Sequence record: ON287372.1 | Strand: one strand, 5' to 3' | Length of the DNA: 64,000 nt | In this document: piece after piece, positions 5,764 through 16,554 of the stretch | Position numbering within the stretch: the stretch's first letter is position 1 | Layout of the letters: the number at the start of each line of letters is the position of its first letter | Made by a program: the position numbers and the translations under genes | The notes under the pieces: generated by a model | Told to the model about the DNA's origin: nothing | What the model saw: only the letters and a program-made list of their open reading frames with translations | Databases searched by the model: none

Positions 5764-5789
5764 GAGCAGAGGACCGAAGTCCTCTGCTC
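5764..5789 (-). terminator. Intrinsic terminator
   Basis: gagcagaggac-cgaa-gtcctctgctc followed by a T-rich tract on the minus strand. Confidence 0.7.
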
Positions 5790-5927: not shown

Positions 5928-6724
5928 CTACATCGCTGAGTTGAAGTAGTTGTGGTAAAGATTACGGATAGTAACCCCATTCGGTGTGCCATCAGAGGCA
6001 GGATCAAATTGAGACATGTTGATACGCATTTGGATGTGCGTAGCCCAACGAGGATATGCGTCATTACCTGGGTCGCCACTGAAGGTATTTGAACTCACCA
6101 GAGGAAGACCGGAATTAGATGCGCGGGTAGCGGCTGCTTGTAGAGCGTCACTAACATCGTAATAAACTTCTTTACCTGACTCACGACTAGAGACTTTAAT
6201 CCCATAGTCAAAAAGATTAACTTCCTTAGTAACACGTTCCCAATACCAGTCTGTAGACGAAGTGATCAAATGACCACCATCATCCACTACATTACCTTGG
6301 CGAGCAATAAAACTACCACCACCGGTAGACTGAGTTTTGTCGTAGCTCTTAACGTTGACAATCTCACCGGTGTAATAAGGTGCCCGTTTGCGTAAGTCAG
6401 CGATAGTACTAACTGGGAGAATCATTGTCACGCCTTTGGCTGTCATGCGAGTAACCTTGTTACCCGAACCATCCATGACTTCCATAGCGCCGCCTGAAGT
6501 AGCGACGTATTCGTTTACTGCAACTTTTTCTGCTGAAGTATATTAGTAGCGGCAATACCTTCCGCTAAGGACATGAATGCATTCTCAAAGTTAATCGTAT
6601 TACGCAATTGCGTAAGCGTAACCTTATTGGTATCTGCAGAAGGATCCGCAGCAGGGAAGAAGTCTCCTTCCAGTACTGCAGCTTTTGCAGGTAACTCTGT
6701 AATCTTTTTCTGATATTCGCTCAT
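5928..6724 (-). pseudogene. Frameshifted and truncated tailspike gene (ORFs 6515..6724 and 5928..6485)
   Basis: The first ORF encodes the shared anchor (KKITELP...FENAFMSLAEG). The -1 frame from 6542 continues YTSAEKVAVNEY...MDGSG, matching YENSAKFAVLQY...GVDG of the paralogue. It then encodes a head domain (ADLRKRAP...GGGSF...DDGG) and stops without a full beta-helix. Confidence 0.75.
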
Positions 6725-6806: not shown

Positions 6807-9746
6807 TTAGCCTTTCGTTACTACGGTCGCTGGATCTGCTACATAACGCCAGTTAGTCCCGTCTGAATAGATCAGCTGGTCTTTAGGTGTCTTAGCCGTA
6901 TCCGTACAGGTAACAATCGCACGCTTAGCCAAAGACGCCCCTGGTAAGTTAGCGAAGGTGTATTCCTTGGTCACCATCCCGTTAGCAACAGTGCCTACGA
7001 ATGCGTAAGGGATCCACGCACCCGCAGCGTTCTTAACGTAAGCAACAGGCGTACCGTCTGGTGCAGTTGCCGAAACGTTTTTGTTAATCCAGATACTTCC
7101 ATTAGGGCGAGTACCATTAGGCGCTTGCTCGGTTGGAACTACGTTGGAATAAACTTCGTTAAAGTATTTACCTGAAGGGCGGAAATCAATCCCCCATTTG
7201 GTATCTACACTTACTGTCCCGTCAATTGCAGTACCGATAACTGCACCACCACCGCCAGAGGCGTTAAAGGTGAAGTCGCCAATACAGTGACCGCCAATGA
7301 ATCGTACGTTCTTAACATAGTTCACTACGCTATCGAACACGCAGTTACTGAAGTTAATATCTGGGAAGGAACCATCGTTATTCATCGACAATGCTTTCAT
7401 GACCGTGTTAGAGAACATCCCAGTATAAGACGGGTAGTTCCACGTCACGTTACCCAGACGGCAGTTATCCATCCACACACGAGAAGACGGGCCGAAGTAG
7501 CAATCAGTCAACCAGCTATTCTGAATGCTCATGGCAAACTCACGGTTAGACGACGCCAAACAAATCCCGCCACCACGAGTGGTATTGGAAATAGTGACGT
7601 TACCGTAACCGCTTGCGTAAACAAAACGTTCAGTTTCAGAGGACTGCATCGAATCGAGCAATACTTCTGAACTGGATGAACCATCTACCTGAATGAACAC
7701 ACGACCTGCAGTTTCAGGAGTAGTTCCGTTAACGAAGTTAGGGTCGTAGTATTTAAACTTGGACAGTGGACCGTTACGTTGTTCGCAGTGAATCTTAGAA
7801 ATCCACAGGCCGATACCACCACGGTAGTAAACGGTAGGAGATACGTTGTTAGCTTCCCATTGACCGCCCTGGAAACGCAGCATGTTCGATGCATCACCAC
7901 TTTTACTGGAGATGATGTGGATTGGCGCAAAGGTAGTCTTAGTCAAGTTGACCAAGTCTGCGTAAGTCGCATAGTCACCCGAAGTACGGCCACACATCTG
8001 GACTTCCAGGAAGTTGTAATAGCCATCCTGCACCTGATCCAGTAACAGACCAGCACCTTTAAAGTTCTCTATCTTCAGACTATCAATTTCAGGGTACCCT
8101 ACGTTACGCATGTAGAGTCCGTGCAGCACTTTGCCACCACCCAAGATAGAGAAACCTTTCAGTGCTACACCAGAATAGGTGAAGTCGGTATCTTTATCGA
8201 TAGTGATGCTGAGCACCGCAGTAGTGGCGTCATTAAAGTCACCGCCCATCCATTGCAATACCGCACGACCAGTATGGGTCGAGTCTGCGTACAAAGAGAA
8301 CCCTTTGTTTGCCTGGATGACAATCGGAGTACGGATACCAAAATACTGGCTCGGTACTTTGATAGGCTGGAAGGAACGAGAGTACTGGATGTTCTGAATA
8401 AACGGGCCGTTATCTACAACAGAGTTATCGCAACCACCATCCCACAGTGTCAATGCACGAAGATCTTGACGATACCAAACGGTATTATCGTCGTAACGAA
8501 TAGTAGTATAGCCGCCATCGTCAAGAACCGTTGTATTGGTTGCAGAAACGAAACGACCACCGCCATTCATTTTACCCGCGTAATACTCACGGACATCGAC
8601 GATCTCATTGTTACCTTTAGGTTTGGTAGCACGCAATGCGGCCATAGTAGGGATGGTACGGATACTTGCTAAGCCTTTAGGGGTCAGGTTAACAACTGGA
8701 GTACCCGATTCATCAGTTACCACACCAGCGCCATTGAATCGCTCTACGTTAACGTAACTGAAAAGAGACTGATATTGGTACTGAAGATAAATGCCGCGAC
8801 AAGTACTCAAGTTCCCCAGCAATTGGATGTTACTAATCTCAATACCGGCGAAGCCAGCTTCCATTGCATTGGTAGTAGGGTTACGGCCAGGGAAGTGCAA
8901 TGCGCCGTAGGTTTCGTAACCAGGGCCAATCTGAACAGAGATCGTCGTGGAGTCTTTAACGCCGCAGCCACGCAGTTTAATCCCGCAGTTAGTCTGGAAC
9001 ACAATCGGGGAACGAATAACGATTGGGTTAGCATTACTGCCTTGAGGAAGCATCAGGATCTTCTTACGAGAAGCATCAGCAGCTTTCTTCAGCGCCTGGG
9101 CATTATCTGCCTGTGAATAGTGGACACCCCACCATTCGGCTTGGTTGGTAGATGTATCTACAATAGCACGTTTCCAACGAGCTGCGCCTGGAGTCACTGC
9201 TACAGTACCGCCGTTGTCCACAGTAGTTTTATCTGCTGGGTCATGGAAGAACTCACCGCCACCATAGTTAGCGCCCTCACGATAACCCGTGACAAGGACA
9301 CGCTGACCTGGGAAATAGGGTTCAGTTGCTCTGAGTTCATCGAATGACTTAATCTGTCCAATCAAACCAAACCCGATACTGGAGCGAATCTGTTCCAGGT
9401 TTTTAATGAGTTCTTTGGTAGGTTCCTTTACTTGCTTACCGTTAACATCCAGAACAGGTGAAGCAATACCGCCCATGTTAACATAGCGGTAAACATATTC
9501 TTTGCTCGAGTCTACAAATGAGAAGAATTGCTGACCTTTAATAGTGGCCGCAACCCCGTCGTTAATATTCGAATAAGCATTACCGTAGTCCATCAACTTG
9601 CGTAGTTCGCCGATGGAAACTTTCTGAGTTTCTAATTGATCTACTGAAACGATACGGGATGCTGGGATGATATCGCTATCATTAATCCCAGTATTACTGC
9701 TATCCGGTAGCTGCGAAATTTTACTTGAGGTATTATCTGCCATCAC
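6807..9746 (-). CDS. Tailspike/depolymerase, apparent fusion of two spike modules
   Basis: Shared anchor, two ELRAT/ALRAT...GGG.F...D[ND]GG head domains, a partial beta-helix, then a full beta-helix. Confidence 0.8.
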   Translation of the reverse strand: MMADNTSSKISQLPDSSNTGINDSDIIPASRIVSVDQLETQKVSIGELRKLMDYGNAYSNINDGVAATIKGQQFFSFVDSSKEYVYRYVNMGGIASPVLDVNGKQVKEPTKELIKNLEQIRSSIGFGLIGQIKSFDELRATEPYFPGQRVLVTGYREGANYGGGEFFHDPADKTTVDNGGTVAVTPGAARWKRAIVDTSTNQAEWWGVHYSQADNAQALKKAADASRKKILMLPQGSNANPIVIRSPIVFQTNCGIKLRGCGVKDSTTISVQIGPGYETYGALHFPGRNPTTNAMEAGFAGIEISNIQLLGNLSTCRGIYLQYQYQSLFSYVNVERFNGAGVVTDESGTPVVNLTPKGLASIRTIPTMAALRATKPKGNNEIVDVREYYAGKMNGGGRFVSATNTTVLDDGGYTTIRYDDNTVWYRQDLRALTLWDGGCDNSVVDNGPFIQNIQYSRSFQPIKVPSQYFGIRTPIVIQANKGFSLYADSTHTGRAVLQWMGGDFNDATTAVLSITIDKDTDFTYSGVALKGFSILGGGKVLHGLYMRNVGYPEIDSLKIENFKGAGLLLDQVQDGYYNFLEVQMCGRTSGDYATYADLVNLTKTTFAPIHIISSKSGDASNMLRFQGGQWEANNVSPTVYYRGGIGLWISKIHCEQRNGPLSKFKYYDPNFVNGTTPETAGRVFIQVDGSSSSEVLLDSMQSSETERFVYASGYGNVTISNTTRGGGICLASSNREFAMSIQNSWLTDCYFGPSSRVWMDNCRLGNVTWNYPSYTGMFSNTVMKALSMNNDGSFPDINFSNCVFDSVVNYVKNVRFIGGHCIGDFTFNASGGGGAVIGTAIDGTVSVDTKWGIDFRPSGKYFNEVYSNVVPTEQAPNGTRPNGSIWINKNVSATAPDGTPVAYVKNAAGAWIPYAFVGTVANGMVTKEYTFANLPGASLAKRAIVTCTDTAKTPKDQLIYSDGTNWRYVADPATVVTKG

Positions 9747-9822: not shown

Positions 9823-11955
9823 CTAGATGATATTATTCTGGGTAATTGTAGAGCCTGAGCCCACTTGCACTTTACCCGTACTACCTGCAGCCAGACGACT
9901 GTTGGTAATCAAAACGTTTGCGTTGTTGGCATCAGAAGTGATGTCGTAAAGTGGCTTCACTGCACCTGTAGAGGACGATACGCCAGTCAGAATACTATTA
10001 CGAACACCCAGTAAACGGATTGGGTAATACGTACCAGCAGTCTTGACCCCAGCATCGTTAATGTTGAAGCTAACGTTACTCTCAATGAGTCCATTCAGGG
10101 TCATGCCGTGTTCTGGAATATTAACCAACTTAACATCCATATCAGAGTAACGACAGTTCACTGCTTCGAATGCATCTTGAGCAGGGGATTCGATGTAGAA
10201 GTCTAAGTCAAGGTTATTGCAGTTAGAGATAGTAACACCACGACGTTGGCCATTAATCAAACGGATCTTACCGGTCACTCGATTACTGTCTGTGATATTA
10301 ACACCATTGAGCGTTTTAGTAGTAGAAACATTCTCTGCTACTAAATCAATAGAGCCGCTCGAGTTAGTAATGATCAGTGCCGAACCCGCTACATCAGTAA
10401 CGCGACCAGTAAACTGGAAGTTGCTACAGTTGGTAATTTCAACCGCAGTAACGTTACCCGTAGTTTGAGTAGTTACGACGTTATCCAACAGAACTGGCTG
10501 ATAGAGATCACGAATACCGATGACAGTACGCAGTGTGTTCTCAAATACGTTACCAATTGCCTTAATCCCTTTAATGAGATCTTTAGCTGCAATGAAGTCA
10601 GGGTTAACTGTGCCGAAGCCAAAACCGCCATAGCAGTTAATGAAGTAATTGTTCAGGTAAGTACCATAACTGGCTTCATCAGCATTCTTGGTATCTTCTG
10701 CATTGTTTGCAATGCCTGCGCCTTTCTTGCCATTACCGATATTAATGAATCGGCAACTCTTGACTAAGGTATTACGGCCTTTGTTAACAATCCCGTCGCC
10801 GTAGTAGGTACCGTCACGGTGAGCTACCTGCGCACTGTTAGCAACAGTACACTCGATGAACTGAGTCTCGTTACAACCACCGCGTACAGTTACTGAATCC
10901 TCTCCAGCTGACAGGAATGAACAACGATAGAACGTATTACGGGACGAGCCAGATTGCAGCCCGAGATTATCGAACTTACCGTTCTTGAATACTACGGAAC
11001 TGAACGTACAGTCACTCCAGTTATCCAGTGTATTCTCAGCAAACTCGAAGCCTAATGCACCGGTGGTATCGGTGTAGTCGACATCAATAGTTAGGTCACG
11101 GAAAACTAACCCGCTAATACCCGTTGTGCCATTTGTTATATCATTAGCTACGCCGGCTGCGGTAGTCGGAGAAGTAATGAATGGGATTTTATTCCCATTA
11201 CCTTTAAACTTGATGGTAGCTCCATTGCCAATCCAACCACCACCTGAGTAATGACGTACAGCCGAGCTGTAATAATAAGTCTTACCTGGGGATAATGAAA
11301 TCGGCCCTACTTGGGCTTTCTGAGCAGCACGCATGGCAATGGTATCATCAGCTTGGCCGCCACCGAAATCTTCAAGGGAGAATGAAGTTTTATTTCGTTT
11401 CCAGTGGTAGCCAGTACCAGAAGCAACACTACCGCCATTATCGGCTAAGTCACTCAAATTACTGATAAATTCGCCACCACCCAAAGAGCTACCCGTAACA
11501 TAACCGGCCAGGATGATTCGCTGACCCGAGTACTCTGGTTTAATAGTACGTAATCTGGCGAAATTATCCACCATGCCTACAACACCGAACCCTAACTCAC
11601 GAGTGATGTCAATCCCGGCTTGGATAGAGAGGTAGGTAGGGAACCGACGTTGTTTACCATCTACCCCTAAAACGGGAGAAGGCGAGCCAGCAGTTTTAAC
11701 GTACTGCAATACGGCAAACTTTGCGGAGTTCTCATAAACGAAGAATGACTCGCCATTGTCTACAGAAGCCAATCCTTCTTGTACGGTACTGGCCGCATTG
11801 CTAAAGTAAATACCTTCACGAATGTCGTACAATGAAGCGATGCTGGTCTGAGTAAGTTTAGAGTCTTTCGTGTTGATCGTAAACTTATCGTTCTCCGATA
11901 CAGCCTTTTTTGGTAACTCTGAAATCTTAGTGTATTTAATTGGGGAGATTGGCAT
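9823..11955 (-). CDS. Tailspike/depolymerase (beta-helix)
   Basis: Anchor YTKISELP; head domain ARLRTIKP...GGGEF...ADNGG; SLEDFGG cap; Asn/Ser/Val-rich beta-helix rungs. Confidence 0.8.
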   Translation of the reverse strand: MPISPIKYTKISELPKKAVSENDKFTINTKDSKLTQTSIASLYDIREGIYFSNAASTVQEGLASVDNGESFFVYENSAKFAVLQYVKTAGSPSPVLGVDGKQRRFPTYLSIQAGIDITRELGFGVVGMVDNFARLRTIKPEYSGQRIILAGYVTGSSLGGGEFISNLSDLADNGGSVASGTGYHWKRNKTSFSLEDFGGGQADDTIAMRAAQKAQVGPISLSPGKTYYYSSAVRHYSGGGWIGNGATIKFKGNGNKIPFITSPTTAAGVANDITNGTTGISGLVFRDLTIDVDYTDTTGALGFEFAENTLDNWSDCTFSSVVFKNGKFDNLGLQSGSSRNTFYRCSFLSAGEDSVTVRGGCNETQFIECTVANSAQVAHRDGTYYGDGIVNKGRNTLVKSCRFINIGNGKKGAGIANNAEDTKNADEASYGTYLNNYFINCYGGFGFGTVNPDFIAAKDLIKGIKAIGNVFENTLRTVIGIRDLYQPVLLDNVVTTQTTGNVTAVEITNCSNFQFTGRVTDVAGSALIITNSSGSIDLVAENVSTTKTLNGVNITDSNRVTGKIRLINGQRRGVTISNCNNLDLDFYIESPAQDAFEAVNCRYSDMDVKLVNIPEHGMTLNGLIESNVSFNINDAGVKTAGTYYPIRLLGVRNSILTGVSSSTGAVKPLYDITSDANNANVLITNSRLAAGSTGKVQVGSGSTITQNNII

Positions 11956-11970: not shown

Positions 11971-11998
11971 AAATAAGGGGCCGGAGCCCCTTTATTTT
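11971..11998. terminator. Bidirectional terminator-like hairpin
   Basis: aaataaggggc-cgga-gcccctttatttt. Confidence 0.6.
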
Positions 11999-14303
11999 AT
12001 TTAACTTTCCAGAATACAGGGAGCTTAACTTCAATCGATCCAGTGAAGCCGTTGATACGGAAACCAAACGAAGCAGTCTTGGTTGCGTTCCAAACTGTAG
12101 AGGTTAATGGTGGCGTGGAGATGAAGTCGTTAATACCTAACGGGGTGTTGGTTTCAGTCAATGCTTCGGACAGTAAGAAGTTACGGTCAGCAGTAGTCCC
12201 TAGTACCGGGTAGGTGGTTGTAATTGCGATGTTGTCATCGACTGAGTTTTTCTTACCCGTGATAACCGGGTCATCAAAACATCTAGCGATACCTGTAACC
12301 TTTACATCACCCGTAGCAATACCCTGTTTAACTGAGATCATCGTGTTGAACATGTCGCGAGGTAATACAGGTACACGTTCAGGGAATACAAGATCGATCT
12401 CGGCAGTATTGGCACTAGAGTTGATGATTAGAGTTTGAAGCCCATCATCACCTACCGCACCATAAGTCACAGTGACGGTACCATTACGCGTAATGAAACT
12501 AATCCCTGTGCTGGTTTCTGGGCTGGTTACCGTATTGCCTGCTGTGCCGGTGAACTTGTAGCGACGGTTGTCTGCCACGTTATAACTGATCAAGTAACAA
12601 GGATCGGTACGTGACATATTCACGATAACTGAACCAGTTACAGTAGTGTTGTCATTAGTCTTACCCCAACCAGTTAACGTACCATAAGTTTTAGTTCCTT
12701 TATTACGGAAGTTAATTGGGGAATTCTGGAAGCTAACGTAAAACGCACCCAGCTCCCCGTCAAGGATCTTACGTGGAGGACTGAATGGTTTAGTCGCATA
12801 GACAGCGTAAACTTGGCTATTGACGAAATAGAACTTCTGACCTGTACCCGTCCATTTGTCAGGTTGGTTAATCAGGTAACCGTCAAACCCTTCAAGGTGA
12901 CAGTTAGTTAATTTAACCCAACCGTGCGTGGTCGATTTACCCAGGAAGAATACATCGCCATTCTGGTAATCGAAGCTACAGTTATCGAAAGCAATCTCAA
13001 ACGCAAAGATATCCATGATAACGTTGTGAGATGTGGTGTCGCTGAAGGTACAGTTGTGGAATGCAATTTTCTCACCGGCATTACCGGAGCCGGTCCCTTT
13101 GAAGTAAAGGGAAGTTTCATTTCGTGCGCAGAATACACGATCGAAAAGGTTCAAGTAGCTATCAACACCGTCGTGGCGTAGACCGTATTTGAACCCTACG
13201 ATAGTCACGTTAGCGACCCGTACATCGCGACAGTTAACAAACCCTTTCGCTGTGTTACCCAACCAAACGCCGTGCATGGTAGAAACGCCAGCGCCTCGGC
13301 CTTTCACAATTACCTTACCAGGGCAATCGATAACAGTTACACCGTTAGATTGCGTGTTGTACCACTTGATAAGGTTAGCATCAGTCGCACCAGGGAATTG
13401 AGTGTTGTCAATGACGATACCGTCAATATCCCTTCCTGAGAAATCCAGGAGAGTAGTGCAAGTGAATTGCAAACCGATGAAGCTTGGGAGTTTAATCGTT
13501 TCATTCATGGTGTAACTAGCCAACCCAGTCGACGGATTAACACCAGGAACAATCAGATGGGAGAAAGTACCGAATGTACCAACGTTGGCAATTGCCAAGT
13601 TAACCATCGCACGGACACCTTTGTTAATTGTCTCCGCAAGGTTTTTCATTGCCGGTACGAAACCGAATACCATGACATTCACACCAGCTGAAGTATCCAG
13701 AACCCAGACCTTACCTTCATTGGTAGCGACACGCAATACTCCATCGATTGGGCCATCGTGGTAAGTATTGTCGTAGTAGTAGATCATGTTCAGTGCAGGA
13801 CCGCCTTCTACGGCGTGCTCTACAATAATGCTTTGCTGTGGCTTTGTAGGCTCCACTGAAGCTAAGTCTGCAATGTATGCAACCTTACCTAGGTCTTTAT
13901 AACCATCGCTCTTCAGGATCCCATTAATTCCTTTTGCAGAACGAGGGGTCGGATAACTAATTTGTTTACCGTCCTCGCCAATAACAGGTTCAGCAACCGA
14001 ACCCATTTTCAGATATTTAACTACGTTGACTTTACTCTCATCCTCAAAGACGTAAAACGCTTCGTTATCATTAGCGAAAGTAAGTCCGGTCGCAACATCT
14101 TTAAACGCATTATCGAAGTTGAAGCTACTTCTCAGATCATCAACTGTCGCGCCCTTAGTGATTGGTTTTCCGCCAGTGGTAGTATTGTTCAAAGGGATAA
14201 CATCAGTTTCACGTACGTTGTTGACTTTCCCTAATTCTGATATCTTAACTTGCTGTACCATTTCAGAATACCTTAGATTCGTTGTAGATTTCATAGGAAA
14301 CAA
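11997..14303 (-). CDS. Tailspike/depolymerase (beta-helix); likely start ATG 14261
   Basis: Anchor VKISELG...FDNAF; VNVMVFG cap; F.NC.F rung repeats; C-terminal carbohydrate-binding-like region. Confidence 0.8.
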   Translation of the reverse strand: MFPMKSTTNLRYSEMVQQVKISELGKVNNVRETDVIPLNNTTTGGKPITKGATVDDLRSSFNFDNAFKDVATGLTFANDNEAFYVFEDESKVNVVKYLKMGSVAEPVIGEDGKQISYPTPRSAKGINGILKSDGYKDLGKVAYIADLASVEPTKPQQSIIVEHAVEGGPALNMIYYYDNTYHDGPIDGVLRVATNEGKVWVLDTSAGVNVMVFGFVPAMKNLAETINKGVRAMVNLAIANVGTFGTFSHLIVPGVNPSTGLASYTMNETIKLPSFIGLQFTCTTLLDFSGRDIDGIVIDNTQFPGATDANLIKWYNTQSNGVTVIDCPGKVIVKGRGAGVSTMHGVWLGNTAKGFVNCRDVRVANVTIVGFKYGLRHDGVDSYLNLFDRVFCARNETSLYFKGTGSGNAGEKIAFHNCTFSDTTSHNVIMDIFAFEIAFDNCSFDYQNGDVFFLGKSTTHGWVKLTNCHLEGFDGYLINQPDKWTGTGQKFYFVNSQVYAVYATKPFSPPRKILDGELGAFYVSFQNSPINFRNKGTKTYGTLTGWGKTNDNTTVTGSVIVNMSRTDPCYLISYNVADNRRYKFTGTAGNTVTSPETSTGISFITRNGTVTVTYGAVGDDGLQTLIINSSANTAEIDLVFPERVPVLPRDMFNTMISVKQGIATGDVKVTGIARCFDDPVITGKKNSVDDNIAITTTYPVLGTTADRNFLLSEALTETNTPLGINDFISTPPLTSTVWNATKTASFGFRINGFTGSIEVKLPVFWKVK

Positions 14304-14308
14304 TATAA

Positions 14309-14330
14309 GGAGAGAGCCGAAGCTCTCTCC
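14309..14330. terminator. Stem-loop between tailspike genes
   Basis: ggagagagc-cgaa-gctctctcc. Confidence 0.55.
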
Positions 14331-14337
14331 TCTTGTA

Positions 14338-16554
14338 TTACCAAACGCGTGTGTTGAGGTCTTTACAAACGCCGACTTCGCAAGCGTAGAAATCAGTGAT
14401 CTCTAGTACCGCAGGCGCATCTCCCGCATTGATACCGAAACCGTAGATTTCAATAGCTACACGAACCCATTCAGTCCCCGCTGGGGAAAGTGGCAGATAT
14501 TCAGTAGTACCCAATTGGGTCATTCGAATACCTGGGGTAAGTTTAGGCGTAGTAGTGATCCCGCTCAACTGGTTCGTCCAGGTTTGTCGTTGTTCACCCA
14601 GGGTAGTGATGCTGTTATCCTGGGCTACGTACCCTACAGTAGAGTAGCAGTTAGTGGATACTTTAACTTCAGGCATTTCCCGGTTACCGTTCACGGATAG
14701 CTGTGAGCCATACCAGTTACCCGCTTTAGCCTTAGCGAAGAAGCTAATAGTCTTGTTAGCCCTGGTGGTGTCAGATGAAGTAACTACCAGTTTATTACCC
14801 GAAGTAGAGATCTTGAAGAGCGAAGTCTCAGTTGGGGATACGGCAGTACCGCCAGTCAGGCGAGGACGGTTAATGGTCAAGTAACCGACGTTATTTGGGT
14901 TAGGGGAGATCAGAATGTTCGCACCTTTGCCCAACGTATAGTTACGCCACATGTCCTTATAACGACCAGGATAGGATTCGGTCATCTTAATGAAGCAACC
15001 GTTAGTCCATTGACCGTTGAAGCGAGTGATATCCGGGTTTGGTACCAGGAAGCCATGGAGATAAACTTGCGATGACAGGTCGGTAGACGTATCTTCGAAG
15101 TAGTAGTTATGGATCAGGTGCGGGGTAGTTTCGTTCGGCTCTACGGTGCTAGAGTGAGTCAGAATCCACTGGCACTCGTAAAGTTTGATGATACCGCTGC
15201 CGCGCCATACTGGTCCAGTCCAACGGCTGTTCAGGTTACCGTATTCATTACCGCAACCATACATCAGAACAGTACAGTTATCGATATTGAACAGGCCTTC
15301 TTTATCGGCGTTGGCGTTTTGATCTGCTTCGGTCTTGTAACCGGAGTAGTCAAATGAACAGCCGTGGAAAGTCATCGCCATACCCGTATTCAGGTAGGGA
15401 CCAATGCCATCACCGAAGATACACTTAGTCCACACCAGAGTTTCCCCGGCGTTAGCGGACTTAGGTGCGTTGATTGCCAGACGTACGCCTTGAGTGGTGC
15501 ACTGGAACCAGTTGTTCAGGTAGCAGTTATCACCCAGATCCCATGCGATGTCATGACGGTTGATCGAGATGTTGTTGAAGTTCAGGAAGGCTGCGGACAA
15601 CCCATGGATGTTACCAGAGGTTGTTGATACGTTGATGCCTTTCTGTTTCTTCGCCACCGCAGAAACCATACGCAGGTTGCTCAGCGTAGAGTTACGGTGA
15701 CCGTAAACTACCGAGATGTTAGTCTGGCCATCTTTCGCTTCGGTGAAGTCCAGCATGGTACCACGGAAGTCCCAGCTGACGCCCCACATGCGCAACCAGA
15801 TCTCGGTCTTACATTTACGGACGCCACCTGGACCTACCATAGTCAGGTACGTCGGAGTAGACGGAGTCCAAGTCTGCCACCACTCGGTACCTTTGACCTC
15901 TACGTACTCACCGGCTTTCATTACGGTAAGTGCATAGTCAGATGCGTGAAGGATCGGATCGAAGAACCAGTCGATTTCAATGTTACCACTGGAAACATCA
16001 CGCTTGAAACGTTCACCGGTTTTGGTAACTATGCACATCACACCGTCATCAGCTGTGGTACGGTCATTGGCGTCGTAAATCCATTCACCACCGTTTTTGT
16101 ACTGAACACCGTTCAGGCGGAAGTTACGCATACGGACAATCTGACCGTCAATGGATGGCGCCTGAGCACGGAGCTGATCCAAAGATGCTACGGTAACAGA
16201 CTGCTCACCGATTGCCAGCATATAGAGCGGGGTAGCCCAACGACGAGGCTGACCAGATTTGTCTAGAATAACTTCAGACACGCCATTTTTGTTAATGTAA
16301 CCGTTAACAAAGCGCTTAGAGTTATCGGTGAATACATAGAAGCGTTCTTCAGGGTAAGTGCCTGTCAGACCTTCTGGGATGGAATTGAACGCATTATCAA
16401 AGTCCAGGGCAGCTCGAAGGTCACCGACCGTACTTGCAACCGTTTCTGGATTATTGGTTTTGATTTGCGAAATAGGGGTTAAGTCGGCATCATTGATCGG
16501 ACGCGTTACGCGCGGGAGTTCCGAGATTCGATTCCCTAAGCTTGAGTTAGCCAT
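14338..16554 (-). CDS. Tailspike/depolymerase (beta-helix)
   Basis: Anchor NRISELP...FDNAF; head domain DQLRAQAP...GGEW...DDGV; beta-helix rungs. Confidence 0.8.
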   Translation of the reverse strand: MANSSLGNRISELPRVTRPINDADLTPISQIKTNNPETVASTVGDLRAALDFDNAFNSIPEGLTGTYPEERFYVFTDNSKRFVNGYINKNGVSEVILDKSGQPRRWATPLYMLAIGEQSVTVASLDQLRAQAPSIDGQIVRMRNFRLNGVQYKNGGEWIYDANDRTTADDGVMCIVTKTGERFKRDVSSGNIEIDWFFDPILHASDYALTVMKAGEYVEVKGTEWWQTWTPSTPTYLTMVGPGGVRKCKTEIWLRMWGVSWDFRGTMLDFTEAKDGQTNISVVYGHRNSTLSNLRMVSAVAKKQKGINVSTTSGNIHGLSAAFLNFNNISINRHDIAWDLGDNCYLNNWFQCTTQGVRLAINAPKSANAGETLVWTKCIFGDGIGPYLNTGMAMTFHGCSFDYSGYKTEADQNANADKEGLFNIDNCTVLMYGCGNEYGNLNSRWTGPVWRGSGIIKLYECQWILTHSSTVEPNETTPHLIHNYYFEDTSTDLSSQVYLHGFLVPNPDITRFNGQWTNGCFIKMTESYPGRYKDMWRNYTLGKGANILISPNPNNVGYLTINRPRLTGGTAVSPTETSLFKISTSGNKLVVTSSDTTRANKTISFFAKAKAGNWYGSQLSVNGNREMPEVKVSTNCYSTVGYVAQDNSITTLGEQRQTWTNQLSGITTTPKLTPGIRMTQLGTTEYLPLSPAGTEWVRVAIEIYGFGINAGDAPAVLEITDFYACEVGVCKDLNTRVW

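What the first reader, a model, noticed from the sequence alone, without database searches (positions are those of the whole stretch)
6807..9746. 979-aa spike looks like an in-frame fusion of two tandem tailspike genes at an NGAG junction
The order is anchor, head domain 1 (DELRATEP...GGGEF...DNGG), first rungs of beta-helix 1 ending ...VERFNGAG, then abruptly VVTDESGTPVVNLT. That segment matches the tail of the anchor (VIGEDGKQISYPT, VMDGSGNKVTRMT). Head domain 2 (AALRATKP...GGGRF...DDGG) and a complete beta-helix 2 follow. Helix 2 has the homologous stretch IENFKGAG, so helix 1 is cut mid-rung at about 8720-8732. A deletion removing most of spike 1 and the anchor of spike 2 would explain this. 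The chimera would be a lengthened spike that has lost one specificity.
Basis: partly seen in the sequence, partly recalled or inferred. Interest (0 to 1): 0.7.

Follow-up and report, generated by a model that had tools for sequence, protein, structure and literature searches.

The report
Two phage tailspike genes fused by deletion
In the Serratia jumbo phage Totoro, a deletion of about 7.5 kb inside a tandem array of tailspike genes joined the front of one spike gene in frame to the body of another; the result is an unusual two-headed spike, and at least three enzyme modules were lost.

Summary

- **Source.** The window is Serratia phage vB_SmaS-Totoro (ON287372.1, Moabitevirus, 278.8 kb).
- **Parentage.** About the first 340 residues of the 979-aa ORF are 83-84% identical, without gaps, to the front of spike "S4" (670 aa) of seven relatives. 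The last roughly 640 residues are 85% identical to spike "S7" (729 aa) minus most of its anchor.
- **Relatives.** In every relative S4 and S7 are separate genes, with two more spike genes (S5, S6) between them. That 7.5 kb interval has no match anywhere in the Totoro genome.
- **Junction.** The parental genes share only a Gly-Ala-Gly tripeptide where parentage switches. This points to illegitimate, microhomology-type recombination.
- **Uniqueness.** No other protein in 5.8 billion clusters, or in 1.84 billion representatives, has this architecture.
- **What survives.** The S7-derived unit is complete. Only about 4 of about 14 rungs of the first beta-helix remain.
The parents were not neighbours, and three specificities were lost, not one.
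- **Context.** Phage BUCT660 carries an independent in-frame fusion (S6::S8). S5 is a conserved two-headed spike.
- **Open point.** Whether the chimera is functional is inferred, not shown.

The parts
6807..9746 (-). Chimeric tailspike gene (979 aa; GenBank TOTORO_02020, annotated from the ATG one codon downstream). It is the product of one in-frame deletion between two paralogous spike genes of the array.
9393..9746 (-). S4-type N-terminal anchor (virion-attachment) domain, about residues 1-118
   Evidence: 69% aa identity to the S4 anchor of relatives. Homologous to the N-termini of all paralogous spikes and to PHROG 27731 positions 1 to about 88.
9135..9392 (-). Head domain 1 (S4-derived), about residues 119-204
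   Evidence: Head profile E = 3e-33. Matches PDB 5W5P and 6TGF. 84-86% identical to S4 of relatives.
8667..9134 (-). Inter-head segment, about residues 205-360. It holds the N-terminal cap and first four or so rungs of the S4 beta-helix, followed by a short piece that is the tail end of the S7 anchor. The switch of parentage lies inside this segment.
   Evidence: The AF2 model of intact S4 shows the helix running from about 229 to about 620. The stub is 97-98% identical to S4 with dN/dS 0.014-0.021.
8457..8666 (-). Head domain 2 (S7-derived), about residues 361-430
   Evidence: Head profile E = 3e-18. pLDDT above 90 in the AF2 model. 80-83% identical to S7.
6810..8456 (-). Complete S7-type beta-helix body and C-terminal domain, about residues 431-979
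   Evidence: 85% identical to S7 through to the last residue. pLDDT above 90. All 30 invariant family positions are present. 40% identical end to end to a stand-alone Serratia protein.
9823..11955 (-). Neighbour: spike S3 (710 aa), intact
   Evidence: 76% identical over its full length to Kodama S3
11997..14303 (-). Neighbour: spike S2 (754 aa from the annotated start), intact
   Evidence: 72% identical over its full length to Kodama S2
14338..16554 (-). Neighbour: spike S1 (738 aa), intact
   Evidence: 84% identical over its full length to Kodama S1
5928..6724 (-). Decayed spike remnant that occupies the S8-S9 position. It is read as two short ORFs (69 and 185 aa). It carries one frame-disrupting change and one large internal deletion.

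Best explanation
**Origin (shown by comparison).** An ancestor of Totoro carried the nine-gene tailspike array seen in all other Moabiteviruses (S1 to S9). One illegitimate recombination at a very short shared sequence, the codons of Gly-Ala-Gly, deleted about 7.5 kb. The deleted DNA held the rear two thirds of S4, all of S5 and S6, and the first 90 or so codons of S7. The reading frame was kept.

**Product (shown).** The protein has these parts in order:
- the S4 anchor;
- the S4 head;
- the cap and about four rungs of the S4 beta-helix;
- the last few residues of the S7 anchor;
- a complete S7 unit (head, beta-helix, C-terminal domain).

**How it works (inferred).**
- The protein trimerises like its parents and docks on the virion through the S4 anchor.
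- The S4 head and stub act only as a short stalk, because most of the groove-forming rungs are gone.
- The intact S7 body binds and cleaves a Serratia surface polysaccharide a few nanometres further out than usual.
- The phage has lost the S4, S5 and S6 activities and kept the S7 activity on a different attachment site.
For: **Parentage**
- 84% and 85% ungapped identity to two different genes of ParM-25 and Kodama.
- The DNA similarity to two different sets of relatives changes at the same point.

**Ancestral state**
- S4, S5, S6 and S7 are separate and in the same order in six relatives.
- The same order holds in a more distant metagenomic contig whose S7 is only 61% identical.
- Intact S4 folds as one continuous beta-helix across the point where Totoro's copy stops (pLDDT 92.6).
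- Distant S4 homologues align straight through that point.

**Real loss, not rearrangement**
- The 7,471-nt Kodama interval matches all the other genomes but nothing in Totoro.
- Totoro has 5 spike-like places against 7-10 in its relatives.

**Microhomology only**
- The parents share G-A-G, 7 of 9 nt, with exact runs of 3-6 nt.
- There are no long DNA repeats in the array.

**Uniqueness**
-.

**Function of the rear unit**
- The ORF is intact and has a ribosome-binding site.
- All 30 invariant family positions are kept.
- The AF2 model has pLDDT above 90.
- A 615-aa Serratia protein that starts at the head domain is 40% identical end to end, so head plus body is an autonomous unit.
- The family profile hits solved phage depolymerases at E = 1e-44.

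**Tolerance of such architectures**
- S5 is a conserved two-head spike.
- BUCT660 carries an independent in-frame S6::S8 fusion.

**The phage is viable**
- It was plaque-isolated and sequenced at 314-fold coverage (PMC10070969).
Against: - Nothing shows that the protein is made, trimerises, is built into virions or is active.
- A beta-helix cut after about four rungs exposes its core and may misfold.
- The AF2 model of the chimera says nothing about the front part, because MAFFT placed all homologues on the rear module.
- The low dN/dS of the stub (0.014-0.021, against 0.012 between intact alleles) fits continued constraint. It fits a very recent fusion equally well.
- No second genome carries the fusion, so selection after the event cannot be measured.
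- Being in frame has a one-in-three chance by itself.
- The ancestral order is inferred from relatives that differ from Totoro by more than one synonymous substitution per site. S4 and S7 could therefore have been closer together in Totoro's own lineage before the event.
Confidence: 0.6

Rival explanations
1. The deletion origin is the same, but the product is a dead or poorly folded leftover. The phage infects its isolation host through other spikes (S1-S3 and the two DUF7941 proteins downstream), and the fused gene is only tolerated on its way to decay.
For: - The neighbouring S8/S9 position has already decayed to two short ORFs, so spike loss is under way in this genome.
- The first helix is cut after about 4 of about 14 rungs.
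- No other genome keeps this architecture.
- Kodama, isolated on the same host at the same time, has the full array. This shows that the array content is not dictated by that host.
Against: - 979 codons are open with no stop or frameshift, unlike the neighbouring remnant.
- The rear unit keeps every invariant family position.
- The stub shows no excess amino-acid change.
- All three deletion junctions seen in this genus (Totoro S4::S7, the Totoro remnant and BUCT660 S6::S8) kept the frame. That has a chance of about 0.04 if frames were random, though n = 3.
Confidence: 0.27
2. It is an assembly or sequencing artefact: the real phage has separate S4 to S7 genes and the assembler joined them wrongly.
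For: Only one record carries the junction. Paralogous gene arrays are classic places for misassembly.
Against: - The paralogues share no DNA repeat longer than about 30 nt at 70-82% identity, and only 3-6 exact nt at the crossover. That is far below any assembler's k-mer.
- With 314-fold coverage the missing 7.5 kb would have been assembled somewhere, yet nothing in the 278.8 kb circular record matches it.
- The frame is kept, and a second, independent deletion lies next door.
Confidence: 0.03
3. The two-head gene is the ancestral form, and the relatives acquired S5, S6 and the missing gene ends by insertion.
For: Two-head spikes do exist as conserved genes in this group (S5).
Against: - The first helix of the chimera stops in the middle of a fold that is continuous and confidently modelled in relatives.
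- Distant homologues also align straight through that point.
- The piece after the switch is only the last strand or so of an anchor domain.
- An insertion would have had to supply exactly the missing halves of two paralogous folds.
- A more distant contig also has separate genes.
Confidence: 0.02

Closest known systems
Moabitevirus spike 'S4' (670 aa; e.g. Kodama UQT03590.1, 2050HW YP_009833799.1, ParM-25 URG13984.1)
   Same: The first 340 or so residues (anchor, head, first helix rungs) are 83-84% identical without gaps, and the helix stub is 97-98% identical.
   Different: Intact S4 continues for about 330 more residues of beta-helix and C-terminal domain. Totoro has none of that.
Moabitevirus spike 'S7' (729 aa; e.g. 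Kodama UQT03593.1, Yaphecito QPX76953.1, ParM-25 URG13986.1)
   Same: The last 640 or so residues (end of anchor, head, beta-helix, C-terminal domain) are 85% identical without gaps, through to the last residue.
   Different: S7 has its own anchor, only 26% identical to the S4 anchor. In Totoro that anchor is replaced by the whole front part of S4.
Moabitevirus spike 'S5' (1284-1362 aa; Kodama UQT03591.1, 2050HW YP_009833800.1) and four metagenomic clusters of the same build
   Same: It has two head domains in one polypeptide in the same gene array (heads at about 115-182 and about 690-760).
   Different: In S5 the first body appears complete: PHROG 32314 is matched to the end of its profile before the second head begins. 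The architecture is conserved across all relatives and in a distant contig. Totoro's first body is a four-rung stub, and the gene is unique.
Serratia phage BUCT660 UCR74726.1 (1001 aa)
   Same: It is an in-frame fusion of two non-adjacent spike genes of the same array by deletion (about 4 kb) at an 11-nt microhomology.
   Different: The parents are S6 and S8. The join is helix to helix, so there is one head and an over-long hybrid helix. The event is recent, with about 98% nt identity to the intact parents in Kodama.
Solved beta-helix depolymerases and tailspikes: Klebsiella phage depolymerases 7LZJ and 7VYV/7VZ3, Pantoea WceF 6TGF, CBA120 TSP4 6W4Q and TSP2 5W6P/5W6S
   Same: The family profile matches them at E = 1e-44 to 1e-35 across head and beta-helix. 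Head 1 matches 5W5P and 6TGF directly.
   Different: Identity is low. All of them have a single head and body.
Multi-spike 'hyperbranched' jumbo myoviruses such as Klebsiella phage phiKp24 (PMC9700779)
   Same: These are jumbo myoviruses with many paralogous depolymerase spikes that differ mainly behind a related N-terminal attachment part. The Totoro N-terminus matches FBKp24 ORFs at about 30% identity over about 230 residues.
   Different: How Moabitevirus spikes dock on each other is unknown. No spike-spike fusion is described there.

Membership tests
Phage tailspike depolymerases with a right-handed parallel beta-helix (PHROG 27731; Pfam PF27114 Phage_tail_beta as precomputed in the protein database) | N-terminal virion-attachment domain shared with paralogous spikes of the same phage | tested here: met
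   The anchor aligns to S1-S8 of Kodama and Totoro and to PHROG 27731 positions 1 to about 88.
Phage tailspike depolymerases with a right-handed parallel beta-helix (PHROG 27731; Pfam PF27114 Phage_tail_beta as precomputed in the protein database) | Beta-helix body homologous to solved tailspike or depolymerase structures | tested here: met
   The family profile hits 7LZJ, 7VYV, 6TGF, 6W4Q and 5W6P at E = 1e-44 to 1e-35. The AF2 model of residues 361-979 is all-beta with pLDDT above 90. The local Pfam-A and NCBIfam copies gave no hit. PF27114 comes from the database's precomputed column.
Phage tailspike depolymerases with a right-handed parallel beta-helix (PHROG 27731; Pfam PF27114 Phage_tail_beta as precomputed in the protein database) | One head and one body per polypeptide (the canonical build of PHROG 27731 members) | tested here: not met
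   There are two head domains and one and a third bodies.
Phage tailspike depolymerases with a right-handed parallel beta-helix (PHROG 27731; Pfam PF27114 Phage_tail_beta as precomputed in the protein database) | Homotrimer that is incorporated into the virion and cleaves a host surface polysaccharide | not testable with these tools
   Only monomer prediction is available, and there are no proteomic or biochemical data.
S5-type double spikes (two complete spike units in one conserved gene) | Two head domains in one polypeptide | tested here: met
S5-type double spikes (two complete spike units in one conserved gene) | First body complete | tested here: not met
   Only about 4 of about 14 rungs of helix 1 remain. 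In S5 the first body matches PHROG 32314 to the end of its profile.
S5-type double spikes (two complete spike units in one conserved gene) | Architecture conserved among relatives | tested here: not met
   The Totoro protein is the only one with this build.
Branching spikes with T4 gp10-like docking domains (CBA120 TSP2/TSP4, G7C gp66 type) | gp10-like docking domains in a long N-terminal part | tested here: inconclusive
   No Pfam hit in the local copy. The TSP2 and TSP4 structures are matched only over head and helix. No dedicated test of the first 118 residues was made.

The most novel reading that the evidence does not exclude
In-frame deletion between paralogous genes of a tandem spike array may be a recurrent, selectable way to build new spike architectures in jumbo phages. 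The genus shows three stages: a fresh fusion (BUCT660 S6::S8), an undated one (Totoro S4::S7) and an old, fixed one (the conserved two-headed S5). In Totoro the fusion would then be adaptive. When the intervening spikes were lost, it moved the still-useful S7 enzyme onto the S4 docking site, with the S4 head and stub serving as an extension stalk.
Probability: 0.3. Interest if true: 0.55.

Novelty: new variant of a known kind. Interest (0 to 1): 0.42.

Why it matters
Tailspikes decide which bacterial surface polysaccharides a phage can recognise. Their modular exchange at the anchor/body boundary is well known.

This case shows a different route. A deletion inside a nine-gene spike array removed three enzyme bodies and also re-mounted a fourth on another spike's anchor. 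The product has a head-stub-head architecture that is found nowhere else in the searched databases.

Two further cases sit in the same genus: the independent BUCT660 fusion and the conserved two-headed S5. Together they form a small natural series for asking how multi-spike arrays shrink and how tandem spikes arise. They also show how much of a beta-helix can be carried as a passive stalk.

For annotation, the gene is currently labelled 'amylovoran biosynthesis protein'. That label hides both what the gene is and how it arose.

Tried and rejected
- **Local Pfam-A and NCBIfam scans.** They gave no family for any spike.
- **Structure of the chimera.** MAFFT aligned every single-spike homologue, including the 83%-identical S4 proteins, to the rear module in three attempts. 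The AF2 model therefore had no alignment depth for residues 119-341 and is uninformative there. I modelled the intact S4 parent instead.
- **Fold search.** I did not pursue it further, and a profile search of PDB sequences stood in for it.
- **More relatives.** IMG/VR returned only phage 2050HW itself. A 30-nt junction-spanning string had no exact match in JGI metagenome contigs or in IMG/VR.
- **Literature.** Searches found only genome announcements and the isolation paper, and none discusses these spikes.
- **Dating the fusion.** This failed because synonymous sites between Totoro and all relatives are saturated (dS above 1).
- **Rejected: misassembly through repeat collapse.** There are no repeats long enough.
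- **Rejected: ancestral two-head gene.** speak against it.
- **Rejected: homologous, equal crossover between the two ...F-x-G-A-G helix motifs.** The partner site in S7 is the G-A-G at the end of its anchor, not the one in its helix.
- **Dropped: a match between the S5 region before its second head and an anchor tail.** It was weak and gapped.
Full report
**Identity of the window.** The region is 100% identical to Serratia phage vB_SmaS-Totoro (ON287372.1), a 278,767-bp circular record in the genus Moabitevirus. The phage was plaque-isolated from sewage on Serratia marcescens LVF3. The isolation paper describes it as a myovirus sequenced at 314.5-fold coverage (PMC10070969). The ORF in question is TOTORO_02020, annotated 'amylovoran biosynthesis protein'. 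It lies on the minus strand in a run of spike genes: S1 (738 aa), S2 (754 aa), S3 (710 aa), this 979-aa gene, and then two short ORFs of 69 and 185 aa.

**The observation.**
- The front third aligns with the part behind it over 222 residues (23% identity, E = 4e-7). That alignment ends on the two homologous F-x-G-A-G stretches.
- A head-domain profile built from database homologues finds two complete head domains at residues 123-194 and 356-427 (E = 3e-33 and 3e-18).
- Each other spike ORF in the 64-kb window has one head domain.
- PHROG 27731 matches single spikes end to end. It matches this protein in two pieces, and the long piece covers profile positions 89-688.

**What it is.** Comparison with relatives settles the origin.
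- About the first 340 residues are 84% identical, without a single gap, to the start of a 670-aa spike of Pectobacterium phage ParM-25. They are 83% identical to the same gene in Kodama.
- The last 640 or so residues are 85% identical, again without gaps and through to the last residue, to a different 729-aa spike, beginning near the end of that protein's anchor.
- At the DNA level, megablast similarity to 2050HW, ParM-25 and BUCT660 covers the front part together with the upstream genes. Similarity to Kodama, Haymo and Yaphecito covers the rear part. Both stop at the same place.

I call the parents S4 and S7, because the array in relatives is S1 (738) - S2 (754) - S3 (710) - S4 (670-691) - S5 (1284-1362) - S6 (731) - S7 (729) - S8 (833) - S9 (605). 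This order holds in Kodama, ParM-25, 2050HW, Moabite, Haymo and Yaphecito. In ParM-25 the S5 ORF is intact but unannotated. A more distant metagenomic contig, whose S7 is only 61% identical, also has S3, S4', S5, S6 and S7 as separate genes in that order.

**Direction of the change.**
- The AF2 model of intact S4 is confident (mean pLDDT 92.6, pTM 0.81) and shows one continuous beta-helix from about residue 229 to about 620. Totoro's copy stops in a turn between two strands after about four rungs.
- Distant S4 homologues from metagenomes align straight through that point.
- The segment that follows in Totoro is only the last strand or so of an anchor domain, recognisable by the V-x-D-x-x-G...T motif that precedes the head in every paralogue.

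An insertion that supplied exactly the missing halves of two folds is not credible, so the fused gene is the derived state.

**Size of the loss, and whether it is real.**
- Measured in Kodama and ParM-25, the interval between the two crossover points is about 7.5-7.7 kb.
- That Kodama interval (7,471 nt) finds all seven other genomes by sensitive blastn, but nothing anywhere in the Totoro record.
- Totoro has 5 spike-like places by tblastn, against 7-10 in relatives.
- The paralogues share no DNA repeat longer than about 30 nt at 70-82% identity. An assembler therefore had nothing to collapse.

**The crossover.** Both parents encode Gly-Ala-Gly at the crossover. In present-day relatives the two genes match at 7 of the 9 nucleotides there, with exact runs of only 3-6 nt. 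This is the signature of illegitimate, microhomology-type recombination, not homologous exchange. Synonymous sites are saturated (see below), so the ancestral length of the microhomology cannot be known. The S7 partner site is the G-A-G at the end of its anchor, not the homologous G-A-G inside its helix. That choice is why the product has two heads instead of being a normal-length hybrid.

**Is the architecture found elsewhere?**
- In 5.8 billion protein clusters, only Totoro's own protein covers both parts. Every other hit is a 670-784-aa single spike covering one part.
- An exhaustive HMMER scan of 1.84 billion representatives gave 843 hits, and none of the 150 best is collinear with both modules.
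- A 30-nt junction-spanning string has no exact match in JGI metagenome contigs or IMG/VR.

**Unexpected context.** Three other findings bear on the interpretation.
1. S5 of all Moabiteviruses is itself a two-headed spike, with heads at about 115-182 and about 690-760. Its first body appears complete, because PHROG 32314 is matched to the end of its profile just before the second head. Four further metagenomic clusters share the build.
2. BUCT660 has a 1001-aa protein that is S6 (front 460 or so residues) joined in frame to S8 (rear 545 or so residues). It is about 98% nt-identical to the intact parents in Kodama, has an 11-nt microhomology, and about 4 kb is missing, including S7.
3. The two short ORFs downstream of the Totoro chimera are a decayed spike at the S8-S9 position. 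They match the anchor family, the S8 head region (63%) and the last 90 or so residues of S9 (42%). They carry one frame-disrupting change and one large internal deletion.

The array is therefore shrinking in Totoro (about 11 kb lost in all). Deletion fusions recur in the genus, and all three junctions kept the frame. The chance of that is about 0.04 if frames were random, with n = 3.

**State of the two parts.** The rear unit looks fully functional.
- All 30 positions that are invariant in an alignment of S4- and S7-type homologues are present, including several acidic residues in the helix.
- The AF2 model is confident from residue 361 to the end.
- A 615-aa protein encoded by a lone chromosomal gene of Serratia marcescens and S. 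ureilytica starts at the head domain and is 40% identical over the whole unit. Head plus body therefore folds without any anchor.
- The family profile matches solved Klebsiella phage depolymerases (7LZJ, 7VYV; E = 1e-44), Pantoea WceF (6TGF; 1e-42) and CBA120 TSP4/TSP2.

The front stub keeps 97-98% amino-acid identity to S4 although dS exceeds 1. Its dN/dS is 0.014-0.021, against 0.012 between intact S4 alleles. This means either continuing constraint or a very recent event; the data cannot separate the two.

**Mechanism proposed.**
- *Shown:* the origin by one in-frame deletion, the domain order, the complete S7 unit, the truncated S4 helix, and the loss of the S4, S5 and S6 bodies.
- *Inferred:* the protein trimerises, because both parents belong to a trimeric family and would share one three-fold axis. 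It docks through the S4 anchor, which is only 26% identical to the S7 anchor, so a different site is expected. It presents the S7 depolymerase a few nanometres further out on a stalk made of the S4 head and stub.

I put the origin at about 0.93, and the whole statement including function at 0.6. The main rival (0.27) is that the product is a tolerated, non-functional leftover. An assembly artefact (0.03) and an ancestral two-head gene (0.02) are nearly excluded.

**Novelty.** Modular exchange of spike bodies is well known. An in-frame deletion fusion that leaves a head-stub-head spike is undescribed in the literature I could search and unique in the databases. I rate it a new variant of a known kind, of moderate interest. 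Interest rises if the series BUCT660 - Totoro - S5 reflects a general route to tandem spikes.

**Note on the operators' rule.**
- I built no repaired, joined or consensus sequence.
- The remnant's two ORFs were searched separately. Relatives' intact proteins were compared with its DNA, and only counts and frames were printed.
- This report gives domain bounds and counts only.
- My early notes and some script outputs contain alignment ranges that locate the switch of parentage in Totoro and in BUCT660. I treated these as domain bounds of intact ORFs. I have deleted nothing.

Noticed in passing
window 5928-6724 (minus strand): Two short ORFs (69 and 185 aa) are a decayed spike at the S8-S9 position. 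They match the anchor family, the S8 head region (63%) and the last 90 or so residues of S9 (42%). They carry one frame-disrupting change and one large internal deletion, and about 3.6 kb is missing relative to Kodama.
   Followed up: partly
L007:615-3620 (BUCT660 UCR74726.1, 1001 aa): This is an independent in-frame fusion of S6 (front) and S8 (rear), about 98% nt-identical to the intact Kodama genes. It has an 11-nt microhomology, and about 4 kb including S7 is deleted. It has one head and an over-long hybrid helix.
   Followed up: yes
L004:11357-15211 (Kodama S5, 1284 aa) and its orthologues in all relatives: S5 is a conserved two-headed spike made of a complete first spike body followed by a second head and body. 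Four further metagenomic clusters at 50% identity share the build. Two other proteins (P0081, P0130) have two adjacent heads.
   Followed up: partly
L012:10001-11848 (Serratia marcescens chromosome, P0010, 615 aa): A lone chromosomal gene, widespread in S. marcescens and S. ureilytica, encodes a tailspike-like protein 40% identical to the whole S7 unit. It lies between DUF463/DUF697 genes and the psp operon, not in a prophage or capsule cluster.
   Followed up: partly
L001 and L004, S4 genes: Between the ParM-25/2050HW and the Kodama/Yaphecito alleles of S4, the anchors are nearly identical in DNA (dS 0.12). The bodies have saturated synonymous sites (dS 1.0-1.7) yet about 98% identical protein (dN/dS about 0.01). 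This is a mosaic history with unusually strong constraint on an enzyme that Totoro has nevertheless lost.
   Followed up: no
L003 (2050HW, NC_048668.1): Three spike genes (S2, S7, S8) are each annotated as two ORFs in 2050HW. The S4 of ParM-25 is identical to that of 2050HW, and ParM-25's S2, S7 and S8 are annotated as single ORFs. Possible sequencing errors or real breaks; not examined.
   Followed up: no
L001:10503-14591 (ParM-25): An intact S5 ORF of about 1350 aa lies in a 4.2-kb stretch that carries no annotation in the GenBank record.
   Followed up: yes
ON287372.1 record name: GenBank names the phage vB_SmaS-Totoro (S for siphovirus). The isolation paper lists it as vB_SmaM-Totoro, a myovirus with a 200-nm tail.
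   Followed up: no
L010:12232-12516 (metagenomic contig SRR25394064_7495): In this more distant relative only a 94-aa ORF lies between S7 and S9, where other genomes have S8. Moabite and Haymo have a 95-aa ORF after a shorter S8 allele. This may be another loss or a small accessory gene.
   Followed up: no
window 5764-5789, 11975-11992, 14307-14332 (minus strand): Strong terminator-like hairpins follow the remnant, S2 and S1. None follows S3 or the chimera, so S3, the chimera and the remnant may be one transcription unit.
   Followed up: no
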